This document shows, piece by piece, positions 7,478 to 58,599 of a stretch of 64,000 nt of DNA. The notes under the pieces are model-generated. The model saw nothing but the letters and a program-made list of their open reading frames with translations. It had not been told where the DNA came from and did no database searches. Position 1 is the first letter of the stretch; every line of letters starts with the position of its first letter. Location of the stretch: the IMG/VR virus record IMGVR_UViG_3300032268_000832, positions 186,001-250,000 of that record; one strand, 5' to 3'. A program made the position numbers and the translations under genes.

Positions 7478-8173
7478 ATGAATTACGCACAAGAATTTAA
7501 AGATTACGCTATCAAACACATGGGTATTAGCTCATGTCAATTTCAAGCATGGGAAGATGTTCAAACTAGAATATATGGTCCATCAGCTTCACTAACACCT
7601 TACATCTTAGAAGAAAGAGAATTGCGTGTTACACAAATGGATATTTTTTCCAGACTTATGATGGATAGAATCATTTGGTTAGCTGGACCTGTTAACGATA
7701 GAATGAGTACTGTTGTTCAAGCACAGTTAATGTTCTTAGACAATTTAGAAGTTAAGGATGTTACGTTACATGTTGATACACCAGGTGGGTCAGTAAAATC
7801 AGGTCTTTCAATCGTTGATGTAATGAACTATGTTTCATCTGATATCATTACAGTAAACACTGGTATGGCTGCAAGTATGGGTAGTATCTTATTAGGTGCT
7901 GGTACCAAAGGTAAACGCTTCACATTACCAAATAGTAGAGTAATGTTACACCAAGTATCAACAGGTGCCCAAGGTAACATTCAAGATATCAGACGTTCAA
8001 TCGCTGAGGGTGAAAAATATAACACAACATTATTTAACATGCTTGGAGAATTTACTGACAAAACACCAGAACAAGTTCTTAAAGATGCTGAAAGAGATTT
8101 TTGGATGAATGGTGAAGAAGCGTTGGCTTATGGTATTGTTGATGGTGTTATAACAAACAAAAAGAAAAAATAA
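7478..8173 (+). CDS. clpP: ATP-dependent Clp protease proteolytic subunit
   Basis: DIFSRLMMDRII, TPGGSV, AASMGS, MLHQ, ERDFWM. Confidence 0.95.
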   Translation: MNYAQEFKDYAIKHMGISSCQFQAWEDVQTRIYGPSASLTPYILEERELRVTQMDIFSRLMMDRIIWLAGPVNDRMSTVVQAQLMFLDNLEVKDVTLHVDTPGGSVKSGLSIVDVMNYVSSDIITVNTGMAASMGSILLGAGTKGKRFTLPNSRVMLHQVSTGAQGNIQDIRRSIAEGEKYNTTLFNMLGEFTDKTPEQVLKDAERDFWMNGEEALAYGIVDGVITNKKKK

Positions 8174-8291: not shown

Positions 8292-8642
8292 GGGGTTGGT
8301 TGGTTTTGATTGGGTATAGTCGTAAACTGTAAGCATGTAGTGCTAGATTGGAAGCACTTTAATCTGTCTATTAAACATTGAATTGACAACGATTTTATCG
8401 TATCTGAAAATTTCCTTGATGAAGCTGTAATGGTTTCTAACGGAGAGTTAGCAGTAGCTTAAAACTGCAAATAGTGGTAATCCACTTGATAGTGATAATT
8501 CACTAAATAATGGTACACCATTCATCTTTATTATTGGATGCCATCGATAATATATTCTGGCGCTAGAAGAAAAATTGTAGCTAAACATGTAGAAAACATT
8601 TGAAGAATACTCAAGACGCGGGTTCGATTCCCGTCAGCTCCT
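8292..8642 (+). ncRNA. ssrA: tmRNA; tag ORF 8385-8462 DNDFIVSENFLDEAVMVSNGELAVA*
   Basis: GGGGTTG/CAGCTCC acceptor with G3-U70, GACGCGGGTTCGATTCCCGT T arm, tag ending AVA-stop. Confidence 0.9.
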
Positions 8643-8787
8643 CGAGTACTTTTTTGGGTGTATTAGGTTAATTCTTATTATACTCAACTCTTTAAAAAGA
8701 TTCAGTTAATTTTACCGAAAACATACTGAAATAAAAACCCCTAGTAAATTGTCGCTTACTAGGGGTTTAACTTTTTAATGCAATACC

Positions 8788-9717: not shown

Positions 9718-10377
9718 ATGGCAAGAAAAGAAAAAAACATACACTACATTTATAAAACAACGTGTAATATAACAGGACGATGGTACATCGGAATGCATAG
9801 CACGTATAACTTAGAAGATGGTTATATAGGTAGTGGTAAAACATTAAGACGTTCTATTAGAAAATACGGTAAAGAAAATCACACAAAAGAGATTCTAGAA
9901 TTTTTAGAAAATAGAGAAGAATTAGCTAAAAGAGAAAAAGAAATTGTTAATAAAGAATTAATTTCAGATTCCAAATGTATGAATTTGGCTCTTGGTGGTG
10001 AAGGTGGTGGTTTTATCAATGAAGAACATATGTTTAAATGTGTTAAAGCTGGTAGAAAAAAAACTGACGAAGTTTTAAAAGAAAAGTTCGGTGGTGATGA
10101 AAACTGGTTAAGTAGATTCAATTCTCATGTTAATAAAATAGCTTGGGAAAATGAAGAATACAGACAGAATAAATTAAAAAATCTAGATTGGACTGGTAAA
10201 AATCATGCTGAAGAATCTAAACGTTTAATCTCTGAAAAAAGAAAAGGTACTGGTATTGGTGAAACAAATAGTCAATACGGTACGTGTTGGATAACCAGAG
10301 ACGGTGCTAACAAAAAGATAAAAAAAGAAAACCTTGAAACTTATCTGAACGAAGGTTGGGTTAAGGGTAGAAAATAA
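9718..10377 (+). mobile_element. GIY-YIG homing endonuclease (Seg-like)
   Basis: YIYKTT...WYIGMH...YIGSG, NUMOD3-like GKNHAEESK; sits between two tRNA-Met genes. Confidence 0.85.
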
Positions 10378-10384
10378 AATACAT

Positions 10385-10472
10385 CGCGGAATGGTGGAAA
10401 TGGTAACATGCTAGGCTCATAACCTAGAGGAGCAGTAACACTGTGTTGTAGGTTCGAATCCTACTTCCGCAA
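10385..10472 (+). tRNA. tRNA-Met(CAT) with C1:A72 mismatch and long variable arm
   Basis: CTAGG-CTCATAA-CCTAG; variable hairpin GCAG-TAACA-CTGT. Confidence 0.8.
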
Positions 10473-10473
10473 C

Positions 10474-10528: not shown

Positions 10529-10597
10529 AAAATTAAAACCCATAGCAATATGGGTTTTTCTATTTAAACTAATAATTAATTTAAAACACAAAAACCA

Positions 10598-11275
10598 ATG
10601 GAAAAGATTAAACTTGAAATTCGTGGTGCAGAGGGCGGGACCGATGCAAAGCTATTGGTGTGTGAAATGAAAGACATTTACACCAAAGCAGCAAACATTA
10701 ATAACATCGGATGAATAACCGATGAAGAAAGAGATGGCTATGTTAGCATATGACTAACTGGTAAAAATGTCAAAAAAATCTTCGAAAACGAAATTGGTAA
10801 CCACAGGTGGCAAAGAGTCCCACCAACCGAACGTAAGGGAAGAGTCCACACTAGTTCAATAACAGTAGCACTTATGCAAGAAAACGATTACAAAGAAGTA
10901 GAGATACATCCAAGTGAATATCGTTTAGAAACAACTAGAGGGACTGGTCCAGGTGGGCAGCACCGCAACACTACTGACTCTACAGTAATTGTAACTCATG
11001 AAGCAACAGGTATTAAAGTTGTAAGAAACGGAAGATGCCAACATAAAAATAAAGAAGAAGCTCTTGTCGAATTAAAAAAACGAGTAAACGATTTTTATAG
11101 AAGCGGTCATGATAATGAAGCTAGTGAACAAAGAAAAGACCAAATCGGGAAGGGTGATAGAGGTGATAAACGAAGAACCTACAGAGTTAAAGATGGTGTT
11201 GTAATCGACCATATCACAGAAAAGACTGCAAATATAAAAGACATATACAGAGGTAAAATACAATTACTATCGTAA
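10598..11275 (+). CDS. class I peptide chain release factor (RF1-like PxT and GGQ; no domain 1) with in-frame TGA at 10712 and 10751
   Basis: manual translation [45 protein letters not shown], in frame with track ORF 10874 ([12 protein letters not shown]). Confidence 0.85.
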
Positions 11276-11359
11276 TAAAAAAAAAAGGGTGAAATTTTCA
11301 CCCTTTTTTATTTGTACATAAGTAAAAAAATCGGTATCTTTGTAAAAAAATCTTTAAAT

Positions 11360-13105: not shown

Positions 13106-13178
13106 GGTTCTATAGTATTAACGTGAATACGCCCGCCTCTAAAACGGAGAAATATCGGTTCGAGTCCGATTAGAACTA
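13106..13178 (+). tRNA. amber suppressor tRNA (anticodon CTA)
   Basis: acceptor GGTTCTA/TAGAACT, loop CTCTAAA, T arm ATCGG-TTCGAGT-CCGAT; anticodon stem only 3 bp. Confidence 0.7.
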
Positions 13179-13238
13179 CAAACACTTTACATTTTTTAGA
13201 AAAATGATATATTTATAAACAAAAAACAAATAGAACAA

Positions 13239-23946: not shown

Positions 23947-24018
23947 ACTTCGCTGGTGAAATGGCTATCATCTTGGTCTCCAAAACCAAGGTTTCAGGTT
24001 CGAGTCCTGAGCGTAGTG
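23947..24018 (+). tRNA. tRNA-Trp(CCA)
   Basis: TTGGT-CTCCAAA-ACCAA. Confidence 0.9.
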
Positions 24019-24027
24019 CTAAAACAT

Positions 24028-53865: not shown

Positions 53866-53940
53866 GGCCCCGTCTTCTAAACGGAATAGGAAGCCACCCT
53901 TTCAAGGTGTGTAATGCGAGTTCGAGTCTCGTCAGGGCTA
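53866..53940 (+). tRNA. tRNA-Glu(TTC)
   Basis: CACC-CTTTCAA-GGTG. Confidence 0.85.
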
Positions 53941-53977
53941 CAATCTGGTTAAGATTCCAGTAATCAAAAATCTAAAT

Positions 53978-58431: not shown

Positions 58432-58507
58432 ATGAGGATAGCTCAGTTGGTAGAGCGCTCGGTGGTTCGCTGCCGAGAGGTTGCAGGTTCGAGTCCTGCT
58501 CCTTGTA
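58432..58507 (+). ncRNA. tRNA-like RNA with the anticodon loop replaced by a UUCG tetraloop
   Basis: canonical D and T arms; CTCGGTGG-TTCG-CTGCCGAG. Confidence 0.7.
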
Positions 58508-58599
58508 CAAAAAAATTTTTAACTATTATTTAACAAAAAAATTTTGTAGTTACAAAAATACTTAGTATATTTGCATTGTAAAACATAAACAATAACAAA

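What the first reader, a model, noticed from the sequence alone, without database searches (positions are those of the whole stretch)
10598..11275. Release factor gene interrupted by two in-frame UGA codons
Seen: release-factor similarity ([28 protein letters not shown]) continues in one frame across TGA at 10712 and 10751, with no frameshift or visible decay. The first TGA lies about where RF1 proteins have a Trp. Established: RF2 autoregulates through an internal UGA. Inference: this factor is made only when UGA termination fails, giving a readthrough sensor analogous to the tRNA attenuators. Caveat: PxT predicts UAA/UAG specificity, so the gate codon and the substrate may differ. Domain 1 is missing, as in PrfH-like rescue factors.
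Basis: partly seen in the sequence, partly recalled or inferred. Interest (0 to 1): 0.85.

Follow-up and report, generated by a model that had tools for sequence, protein, structure and literature searches.

The report
Stop-codon-gated phage release factor gene
A lake-water jumbo phage carries a shortened release-factor-1 gene that can only be made if the ribosome reads through two conserved early UGA stop codons. The whole phage family of such genes carries similar early stops or prfB-like frameshift sites, which looks like a built-in gauge of how well the infected cell terminates translation.

Summary
Window 10598-11275 (+) is one 225-codon RF1-like frame with PPT and GGQ motifs and no domain 1. 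It is interrupted only by TGA at 10712-14 and 10751-53. It is not a pseudogene, a sequencing error, selenocysteine, or part of a recoded genome.

Both TGAs are kept in 22 related loci although synonymous sites are saturated. dN/dS before and between the TGAs is 0.03-0.24, similar to the rest of the gene. No other gene in the 306-kb phage has a convincing in-frame TGA, against 915 TGG codons. The ARAGORN "tRNA-SeC(tca)" is really a tRNA-Glu(UUC), so no UGA suppressor tRNA was found.

Of 84 homologues from phages and other mobile elements, 77 carry an early recoding signal at two hot-spots. These are in-frame TGA or TAG, or +1 frameshift sites CTT-TAG-C, CTT-TGA-C or CTT-TAA-C like that of prfB. 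The early stops sit in weak contexts (+4 base A or C in 75 of 76, never T). The true stops are TAA followed by T.

Best reading: programmed double UGA readthrough makes synthesis of the factor depend inversely on UGA termination, that is on RF2 activity. That sensor function is inferred, not shown. The closest analogues are prfB and the Mimivirus release-factor gene. I found no prior description for phage or bacterial RF1-type genes.

The parts
10598..11275 (+). Whole gene for a domain-1-less RF1-like factor: 225 codons including the two in-frame TGAs, ending in TAA
10598..10711 (+). N piece, codons 1-38. It corresponds to the start of RF1 domain 2 (the LEIRGAEGG helix-tip region).
   Evidence: Matches prfA profile 105-137. 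dN/dS is 0.03-0.24 against diverged relatives.
10712..10714 (+). First gate: in-frame TGA (codon 39), context GGA TGA A
   Evidence: Conserved in 26 of the classified loci (22 with both TGAs, 4 with TGA plus a frameshift site), plus L045 with this TGA alone. Aligns to TGG in L014, L094 and L107.
10715..10750 (+). Twelve sense codons between the two gates
   Evidence: pN/pS is 0.39, with the frame kept in all relatives.
10751..10753 (+). Second gate: in-frame TGA (codon 52), context ATA TGA C
   Evidence: The same column holds TGA in 36 loci and TAG in 3. A CTT-TAG-C +1 frameshift site lies two codons downstream in a sister clade.
10754..11272 (+). C piece, codons 53-225: decoding loop, GGQ domain and domain 4. 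The first in-frame ATG/GTG/TTG after the second TGA is codon 93 (10874), so the piece cannot be made on its own with its decoding loop.
10808..10810 (+). Trp71 of HRWQR, encoded by TGG. It is TGG in nearly every relative that has Trp at this column and TGA in none of the reliably aligned ones, so TGA is not a general Trp codon here.
10820..10828 (+). PPT tripeptide in the RF1-type PxT position, flanked by Q72 and by H84-T85
   Evidence: The alignment to T. maritima RF1 is.
10952..10960 (+). GGQ peptidyl-tRNA hydrolysis motif
11273..11278 (+). True terminator: TAA followed by T, in fact a tandem TAA TAA. This is a strong context, in contrast to the two gates.
   Evidence: Across the family, 38 of 41 true stops are TAA and 33 of 41 have +4 T.
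10535..10558 (+). Terminator-like hairpin between tRNA-Met and the gene. It separates the gene from the upstream tRNA unit.
11281..11309 (.). Terminator-like hairpin with T and A runs on both sides, directly after the gene
23947..24019 (+). Phage tRNA-Trp(CCA), the most likely near-cognate decoder of UGA (inference). Its D stem has U11-A24, the same pair as in the Hirsh UGA suppressor.
   Evidence: The frameshift-type relative G003 has the same pair, so this feature does not discriminate.

Best explanation
The gene encodes a functional class-I release factor of RF1 type without domain 1. The full protein is made only by ribosomes that read both early UGA codons (39 and 52) as sense, in frame.

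No dedicated UGA-suppressor tRNA was found. Decoding is therefore most likely near-cognate readthrough, probably by Trp-tRNA(CCA) from host or phage, in competition with the host's RF2. Both UGAs sit in weak termination contexts (UGA-A and UGA-C). Output should therefore scale roughly with the square of readthrough efficiency and rise steeply when UGA termination capacity (RF2 activity) falls in the infected cell.

This is the readthrough counterpart of the prfB +1 frameshift gate. Sister genes in the same family use the prfB device itself (CUU-UAG-C, CUU-UGA-C, CUU-UAA-C).

Shown: the stops are real, conserved, position-specific, in leaky contexts, flanked by sequence under purifying selection, and unique to this gene in the genome. 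Inferred: which tRNA decodes them, that RF2 sets the yield, and that the purpose is to couple factor supply to termination demand. One way a feedback loop could close: extra RF1 activity takes over UAA, which ends 86% of the phage's ORFs, and so frees RF2 for UGA.
For: - **Frame and motifs.** The frame and the RF motifs are intact across both TGAs.
- **Conservation.** Twelve diverged genes of this type all keep TGA/TGA while dS exceeds 1. dN/dS for the part before and between the TGAs is 0.03-0.24, against 0.05-0.13 for the C part.
- **Family pattern.** 77 of 84 classifiable homologues carry an early recoding signal at codon 38-44 and/or 52-54. At least 15 switches among the states none, in-frame stop and frameshift are needed on the tree.
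- **Frameshift relatives.** Sister genes carry prfB-like sites TGY-CTT-TAG-C. GC-rich clades carry GGAGG/GGGGG-N3-CTT-TGA-C.
- **Stop contexts.** The +4 base after early stops is A 41, C 34, G 1, T 0. Leu after the stop is CTN in 34 of 34 cases, while TTR makes up 49% of Leu codons elsewhere in the same genes. The true stops are TAA in 38 of 41 and have +4 T in 33 of 41.
- **Not a general Trp codon.** Trp71 is TGG in nearly every relative with Trp at that column and TGA in none of the reliably aligned ones.
- **Genome uses the standard code.** Coding cover is 0.85 under code 11 against 0.87 under code 4. TGA ends 22-28 ORFs. There are 915 TGG codons and no other convincing in-frame TGA.
- **No tRNA(UCA).** Infernal's register and homologous tRNAs show the 'SeC(tca)' call is tRNA-Glu(UUC).
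- **Standard-code hosts.** In-frame TGA also occurs in 52-62% GC contigs and in elements of isolates of Cupriavidus and Pararhizobium.
- **No internal start.** No in-frame start codon lies between the second TGA and codon 93, so the conserved decoding loop can only be translated by readthrough.
Against: - Two UGAs in series would give a very low yield at ordinary bacterial readthrough rates, so either readthrough is unusually high during infection or trace amounts suffice. Neither is shown.
- The factor's PPT motif predicts UAA/UAG reading, so it cannot directly restore UGA termination. A direct prfB-type feedback loop is therefore missing for this clade.
- Positions 39 and 52 are never TGG in the AT-rich clades and are Cys (TGY) in the frameshift clade, so the inserted residue is uncertain.
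- There are no expression, proteomic or biochemical data. The metatranscriptome contigs only show that the sequence is present in RNA libraries.
- No conserved readthrough-stimulating RNA structure was found.
Confidence: 0.6

Rival explanations
1. Constitutive attenuator rather than a sensor. The two leaky stops simply hold a potentially toxic release factor at trace level, and yield does not vary in any meaningful way with RF2 activity.
For: Unregulated RF2 overexpression is toxic in B. subtilis, while RF1 overexpression causes a milder growth defect (PMC12421855). Jeudy et al. proposed that two recoding events buffer against overexpression in Mimivirus (PMC3521657). The sequence data here do not distinguish a fixed dam from a regulated one.
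Against: A weak initiation site would give low constitutive expression more cheaply. The repeated switching between in-frame stops and prfB-type frameshift sites points to a device whose common property is competition with release factors. In prfB that competition is regulatory (established knowledge).
Confidence: 0.2
2. Dedicated reassignment. UGA is efficiently decoded during infection by a specialised tRNA or by an altered host or phage factor not recognised here, as in TGA-recoded (code 4) phages. On this view the RF gene is the one late-code gene of this phage.
For: Borges et al. detected suppressor tRNAs in only 35% of TGA-recoded phages, and they found RF1 genes in TGA-recoded Jade phages. 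This phage has about 38 tRNA genes, including an amber-suppressor-like tRNA(CUA) and two tRNAs with abnormal anticodon loops.
Against: No tRNA with anticodon UCA exists in the genome; the single ARAGORN call is tRNA-Glu(UUC). No other gene uses in-frame TGA. TGA ends 22-28 ORFs. Trp71 in the same gene family is never TGA in a reliable alignment. In the Jade phages the code-change genes are written in standard code.
Confidence: 0.13
3. Pseudogene: a release-factor gene inactivated by two nonsense mutations and drifting.
For: Gene callers split it; the window's own call is a 133-aa fragment. One relative, L012, does show a frame-disrupting change in the C part.
Against: Both stops are conserved across lineages whose synonymous sites are saturated, with no other stops or frameshifts, and dN/dS is 0.03-0.24 upstream of and between them. 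The stop contexts are non-random.
Confidence: 0.02
4. Selenocysteine insertion at the two UGAs.
For: UGA columns align with Cys in a sister clade, the classical Sec/Cys signature. ARAGORN labels one tRNA 'SeC'.
Against: That tRNA is a 76-nt tRNA-Glu family member, not a tRNA-Sec. There is no SelB in the phage and no conserved hairpin after either UGA (alifold -0.57 kcal/mol). Other clades place the UGA at other columns, or replace it with TAG or with a frameshift site.
Confidence: 0.01

Closest known systems
prfB (bacterial RF2) autoregulatory +1 programmed frameshift at CUU UGA C
   Same: It is a class-I release-factor gene with a premature stop early in the ORF, in a weak context, where passage competes with release-factor action. 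Relatives of the window gene carry the same heptamer logic: CTT-TGA-C with an SD-like GGAGG/GGGGG 3 nt upstream in GC-rich clades, and CTT-TAG-C or CTT-TAA-C elsewhere.
   Different: The window gene continues in the same frame, so it needs readthrough rather than a frameshift, and it has two stops. The protein is RF1-type (PPT) and lacks domain 1, whereas the prfB site lies in domain 1. The gate codon UGA is not cognate to the encoded factor. In prfB the premature stop is never TAG, and no frameshift is known in prfA (PMC12421855). An early in-frame UGA with same-frame continuation has never been found in bacterial RF2 genes, and the RF1/UAG counterpart is 'also unknown' (PMC5009743).
Mimivirus R726 / Megavirus mg280 class-I release factor gene (Jeudy et al. 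2012, PMC3521657)
   Same: It is a viral release-factor gene whose 5' part holds two recoding events. The first is a conserved UGA readthrough for which no cognate tRNA exists. The virus encodes a tRNA-Trp with an A in the D arm like the Hirsh suppressor, and the phage tRNA-Trp also has U11-A24. Relatives L057, L058, L068 and L073 even have the same order of events: UGA readthrough, then a frameshift at UAG.
   Different: The giant-virus protein is of the eukaryotic/archaeal eRF1 type and works on eukaryotic ribosomes. This one is a bacterial RF1-type protein in a phage. The window gene uses two readthroughs and no frameshift. The Mimivirus recoding was tested experimentally; this one was not.
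Stop-codon-recoded phages (code 4 / code 15) with 'code-change' modules (Borges et al., bioRxiv 2021.08.26.457843)
   Same: It is a phage with an RF1 gene, many tRNAs including a suppressor-like tRNA, and in-frame TGA in a phage gene.
   Different: Recoding here is confined to one gene. The genome reads as standard code, and TGA serves as a terminator elsewhere. There is no tRNA(UCA). In the Jade phages the release-factor gene itself is written in standard code, and the in-frame stops lie in lysis and structural genes.
PrfH (RF-H), the domain-1-less release-factor homologue paired with RtcB
   Same: It lacks the N-terminal domain 1 and keeps a decoding domain plus GGQ.
   Different: It scores far better as RF1 than as PrfH and keeps the RF1 PxT-type loop with the flanking Q and HT residues. 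There is no RtcB in the genome. The gene sits among tRNA genes, not in an RNA-repair operon.

Membership tests
Bacterial RF1 (prfA) | GGQ motif in an RF-1 (PF00472) domain | tested here: met
   GGQ lies at 10952-10960. PF00472 scores 83.1 bits against a cut-off of 35.
Bacterial RF1 (prfA) | PxT tripeptide with flanking Gln and His-Thr of the RF1 decoding pocket | tested here: met
   [16 protein letters not shown] aligns with VQRVPVTESGGRIHTS of T. maritima RF1. Actual codon specificity was not assayed.
Bacterial RF1 (prfA) | Full four-domain architecture including N-terminal domain 1; equivalog score above the NCBIfam cut-off | tested here: not met
   The protein starts at prfA profile position about 105. 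The best score is 166.8 bits against a cut-off of 400 (pieces scored separately). No upstream coding sequence is available. It is therefore RF1-like, not a canonical prfA orthologue.
PrfH (TIGR03072) | Score above the family cut-off; divergent decoding loop; neighbouring RtcB | tested here: not met
   It scores 68.1 bits against a cut-off of 166.65. PDB PrfH matches at 1.5e-10 against 3e-37 for RF1. No RtcB is present in the 306-kb genome.
prfB-type +1 programmed frameshift gate | CUU-stop-C slippery site with the downstream ORF in the +1 frame | tested here: not met
   In the window gene the codons before the stops are GGA and ATA, and the ORF continues in frame 0. The feature is met in 28 related loci.
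Programmed stop-codon readthrough | In-frame stop conserved among diverged homologues, coding constraint on both sides, weak termination context | tested here: met
Programmed stop-codon readthrough | Demonstrated full-length product and measured readthrough efficiency | not testable with these tools
   This needs a reporter assay or proteomics.
Genome-wide stop-codon reassignment (code 4 phage) | Many genes with in-frame TGA; higher coding density under code 4; cognate tRNA(UCA) | tested here: not met
   Coding cover is 0.850 against 0.868. No other convincing in-frame TGA was found. The sole 'tca' call is tRNA-Glu(UUC).
Selenoprotein gene | SECIS hairpin after UGA, tRNA-Sec, SelB | tested here: not met

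The most novel reading that the evidence does not exclude
A widespread family of domain-1-less RF1-type factors on phages and other mobile elements works as a termination homeostat. It is wired through premature stop codons of either specificity. UGA gates report RF2 activity. UAG gates, whether in-frame or CUU-UAG-C frameshift, report RF1 activity including the factor's own. Combinations act as AND gates. On this reading the phage senses, and then takes over, translation termination in the infected cell. This would be the first readthrough-gated bacterial-type release-factor gene and the first RF1-type gene with a prfB-like frameshift, and it would be convergent with the Mimivirus eRF1 gene.
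Probability: 0.4. Interest if true: 0.9.

Novelty: new variant of a known kind. Interest (0 to 1): 0.82.

Why it matters
Autoregulation through a premature stop has been regarded as a peculiarity of RF2. A 2016 review states that an early in-frame UGA continuing in the same frame was once hypothesised but never found in bacterial RF2 genes, and that the RF1/UAG counterpart is unknown. A 2025 survey of 12,753 genomes found no programmed frameshift in prfA and never TAG in the prfB motif.

This phage family shows both missing cases. It uses all three stop codons and switches repeatedly between readthrough and frameshift solutions. That offers a natural experiment on how termination efficiency can be sensed.

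The finding also has a practical side. Gene callers split or truncate these genes: database entries of 133, 152, 160 and 178-187 aa are fragments, so the family is under-annotated. Finally, it gives jumbo-phage translation modules (tRNAs, tmRNA, SmpB, ClpP, CCA-adding enzyme) a regulated termination component.

Tried and rejected
- **Suppressor tRNA.** ARAGORN's tRNA-SeC(tca) at 53866-53941 looked like the decoder. Infernal puts the loop as CUUUCAA, giving anticodon UUC. Homologous tRNAs with compensatory acceptor-stem changes in L209 and L268 are called Glu(ttc) and are the only Glu tRNA in their arrays. Rejected.
- **Genome-wide recoding.** Coding-density comparison and two codon-usage screens for in-frame TGA or TAG gave only antisense artefacts and adjacent same-frame genes. 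Rejected.
- **Selenocysteine.** No SECIS, SelB or tRNA-Sec. Rejected.
- **Readthrough-stimulating RNA structure.** Local hairpins place each UGA in a loop in this phage, but there is no conserved structure across 12 relatives. Not supported.
- **Hirsh-like A24 in phage tRNA-Trp as a specific adaptation.** A24 is also present in a frameshift-type relative. Uninformative.
- **Close cultured relatives.** None; all GenBank phage hits are below 60% identity. PADLOC gave no hit. The best PHROG is a full-length RF family of 'unknown function'.
- **Identity of tRNA(CUA).** Similarity to the other phage tRNAs was uninformative.

Full report
**Observation.** Window 10598-11275 (+) translates as one 225-codon frame. 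It is interrupted only by TGA at 10712-14 (codon 39) and 10751-53 (codon 52), and it ends in TAA. The 38-aa N piece matches NCBIfam prfA profile positions 105-137. The 173-aa C piece matches positions 162-333 at 166.8 bits, with Pfam RF-1 at 83 bits and the PCRF C-terminal part at 37 bits. PPT lies at 10820-28 and GGQ at 10952-60. Domain 1 is absent. An in-frame TAA lies 18 nt before the ATG, preceded by a terminator-like hairpin (10535-58) and a tRNA-Met gene. By sequence the nearest solved structures are RF1 (3e-37), then RF2 (1e-21), then PrfH (1.5e-10). The first in-frame start codon after the second TGA is codon 93, downstream of the decoding loop. The most conserved part of the protein can therefore only be translated by reading through.

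**Setting.** The window is bases 186001-250000 of a 306,463-bp IMG/VR virus record with about 32% GC. The same sequence occurs in many lake-water metagenomes and in some metatranscriptomes. Contigs from two other DNA runs and two RNA runs cover part or all of the gene, and none of the listed differences falls on either TGA.

Around the gene lies a translation and proteostasis module:
- DnaJ and ClpP
- tmRNA (8292-8645)
- 28 tRNA genes in the window
- a CCA-adding enzyme
- SmpB, elsewhere in the genome

Start regions lack Shine-Dalgarno motifs (2% against 4% at random) and are A-rich. This is typical of Bacteroidota, so such a host is a plausible inference.

**Not a recoded genome.** Coding cover by long ORFs is 0.850 under code 11 and 0.868 under code 4 or code 15. 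Stops of 365 ORF-genes are TAA 315, TGA 28 and TAG 22. Two screens for in-frame TGA or TAG with coding signal on both sides returned only antisense artefacts, short tails and adjacent same-frame genes. In 230 long ORFs there are 915 TGG codons and no in-frame TGA. TGA-ended ORFs have +4 T in half of the cases and a back-up stop a median of 3 codons further on.

**No UGA suppressor tRNA.** ARAGORN calls a tRNA-SeC(tca) at 53866-53941. Infernal aligns its loop as CUUUCAA, which gives anticodon UUC. Homologous tRNAs in a related jumbo phage and in two other phages are called Glu(ttc). In those two phages, L209 and L268, the tRNAs have compensatory acceptor-stem changes and are the only Glu tRNA of their arrays. 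The whole genome has no other UCA anticodon. A tRNA(CUA) at 13106-13179 is supported by Infernal, but I found no target gene for it.

**Not a pseudogene.** Related loci from viral contigs and metagenome contigs were read codon by codon. Twenty-two loci keep TGA at both positions. Among 12 diverged genes of this type, synonymous sites are saturated (dS above 1 for most pairs) and still all 12 have TGA/TGA. dN/dS of the part before and between the TGAs is 0.03-0.24, against 0.05-0.13 for the C part.

**The family pattern.** Of 84 classifiable homologues, 77 carry an early recoding signal. Positions use P0001 numbering.

| Signal | Loci |
|---|---|
| TGA39 + TGA52 (the window's type) | 22 |
| TGA44 + TGA52 | 13 |
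| TGA44 + TAG52 | 3 |
| TGA at the canonical Trp column only (six of the seven contigs have 52-62% GC) | 7 |
| Single in-frame TGA at other combinations | 4 |
| +1 frameshift site TGY-CTT-TAG-C at codon 54 | 13 |
| That frameshift site plus TGA39 | 4 |
| CTT-TGA-C at codon 54 | 1 |
| CTT-TGA-C or CTT-TGA-G at codon 38 in GC-rich clades, several with GGAGG/GGGGG 3 nt upstream | 6 |
| CTT-TGA-C eleven codons further down (L023) | 1 |
| CTT-TAG-C at codon 38 | 2 |
| CTT-TAA-C at codon 38 | 1 |
| No signal | 7 |

After the +1 shift the sequence rejoins the family alignment (LCL|SG... against IwLTG...). This explains the 178-187-aa database entries as +1-frame fragments. On a tree of the recoding-free C part, at least 15 changes among the states none, in-frame stop and frameshift are needed. 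The family also occurs in genome records of isolates: a Cupriavidus plasmid with an in-frame TGA, Thiobacillus denitrificans DSM 12475 with CTT-TGA-C, and Pararhizobium with TGA at the Trp column. Those organisms are taken here to use the standard code (my own knowledge, not tested).

**Contexts.** In 43 unique in-frame-type genes the base after the early stop is A 41, C 34, G 1 and T 0. When the next residue is Leu, the codon is CTN in 34 of 34 cases, although TTR makes up 49% of Leu codons elsewhere in the same genes. The true terminators are TAA in 38 of 41 and are followed by T in 33 of 41. +4 U strengthens termination in bacteria (PMC5289835, abstract as listed). That UGA-C is the weakest context is my own knowledge. 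Trp71 (HRWQR) is TGG in nearly every relative that has Trp at that column, and TGA only in one unreliable frameshifted alignment. TGA is therefore not a general Trp codon in these genes. The premature stops are confined to the first quarter of the ORF.

**Mechanism.** The shared property of all variants is a premature stop where passage competes with a class-I release factor. For prfB it is established that this makes synthesis inversely dependent on RF2 activity. For the window gene I infer the same logic with readthrough. Near-cognate tRNA, most likely Trp-tRNA(CCA), competes with host RF2 at two leaky UGAs, and only double readthrough yields the factor. The phage's own tRNA-Trp has U11-A24 like the Hirsh suppressor. 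A frameshift-type relative has the same pair, so this proves nothing.

The product has PPT and so should read UAA and UAG. Sister clades with CTT-TAG-C would be truly autoregulated. One possible way to close the loop: 86% of the phage's ORFs end in TAA, which both factors read, so extra RF1 activity would free RF2 for UGA. This is speculation. The alternatives are a fixed attenuator, an unrecognised decoder, a pseudogene, and selenocysteine. Selenocysteine is rejected: there is no SelB, no conserved hairpin, and no tRNA-Sec.

**Comparison with what is known.**
- The Atkins et al. review states that an early in-frame UGA with same-frame continuation was once proposed for RF2 but is found in no bacterial RF2 gene. 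It adds that the RF1/UAG counterpart is unknown, and it cites a giant virus as the only release-factor gene with readthrough plus frameshift (PMC5009743).
- That case is Mimivirus R726 / Megavirus mg280. It has a conserved UGA readthrough followed by a frameshift at UAG or UAA, and a viral tRNA-Trp with a Hirsh-like A (PMC3521657). The order of events is the same as in relatives L057, L058, L068 and L073.
- A 2025 survey found no programmed frameshift in prfA and never TAG in the prfB motif (PMC12421855).
- Work on recoded phages reports RF1 genes written in standard code.
- Papers on huge phages and on release-factor evolution do not mention gated phage factors.
- My other literature searches found no description either. 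The library is not complete, so prior work cannot be excluded.

**Verdict.** The window gene is one member of a large, apparently undescribed set of phage RF1-like genes that are gated by early stop codons. It is a new variant of the prfB and Mimivirus principle, and the regulatory function still needs experiment.

Noticed in passing
window 53866-53941: ARAGORN labels this tRNA 'SeC(tca)'. Infernal's register and homologous tRNAs in other phages show it is a tRNA-Glu(UUC) with a C27-U43 mismatch. It is a trap for anyone scoring suppressor tRNAs automatically.
   Followed up: yes
window 13106-13179: An amber-suppressor-like tRNA with anticodon CUA (both ARAGORN and Infernal agree) lies 1.8 kb downstream of the RF gene. 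I found no convincing in-frame TAG gene in the genome. Its amino-acid identity is unknown. It would compete with an RF1-type factor at UAG.
   Followed up: partly
window 8292-8645; window 7478-8173; genome G000:287508-287939: The phage encodes a tmRNA (Rfam 72 bits, missed by ARAGORN) directly after a ClpP gene, and an SmpB gene elsewhere. Together these form a near-complete trans-translation and tag-degradation set.
   Followed up: partly
L009-L012, L050, L053-L055, L057, L068, L072, L073, L075, L080, L082, L091, L100 (site about 145 nt into each gene): RF1-type genes with a prfB-like +1 frameshift site TGY-CTT-TAG-C. The RF1-specific stop in this motif has not been reported for prfA or prfB.
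   Followed up: partly
L013, L015-L018, L023, L108; L121 (Thiobacillus denitrificans DSM 12475); L115 (Cupriavidus plasmid); L123 (Pararhizobium): GC-rich members carry CTT-TGA-C, several of the viral-contig ones with an SD-like GGAGG/GGGGG 3 nt upstream, or an in-frame TGA. The versions in cultured isolates would be tractable test systems.
   Followed up: partly
L011, L020, L075, L081 (tripeptide column): Some family members have SPT instead of PPT. By the tripeptide-anticodon rule (from memory, Ito et al. 2000), Ser at position 1 plus Thr at position 3 would predict reading of all three stops. Others have PPN, PPS or PET.
   Followed up: no
window 58432-58508; genome G000:286683-286759: Two tRNA genes have abnormal anticodon loops. 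ARAGORN gives four-base 'anticodons' ttcg and gagg, and Infernal shows 9 extra bases in the loop of the first. They may contain introns or be frameshift-suppressor-like tRNAs.
   Followed up: no
window 9718-10377: A GIY-YIG-like ORF (weak SegE hit) is wedged between two tRNA-Met genes. The second tRNA-Met (10385-10473) is unusually long at 89 nt. The ORF is probably a homing endonuclease in the tRNA array.
   Followed up: no
window 10705-10724 and 10741-10757: Each UGA lies in the loop of a small local hairpin (CATCGG/CCGATG and GTTAG/CTAAC). The second shows hints of covariation in close relatives, but no structure is conserved across 12 diverged genes.
   Followed up: partly
whole genome G000: There is no Shine-Dalgarno signal upstream of genes, and positions -14 to -10 are A-rich, which suggests a Bacteroidota host. 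TGA-ended ORFs have a back-up in-frame stop a median of 3 codons downstream, against 7 for TAA.
   Followed up: partly
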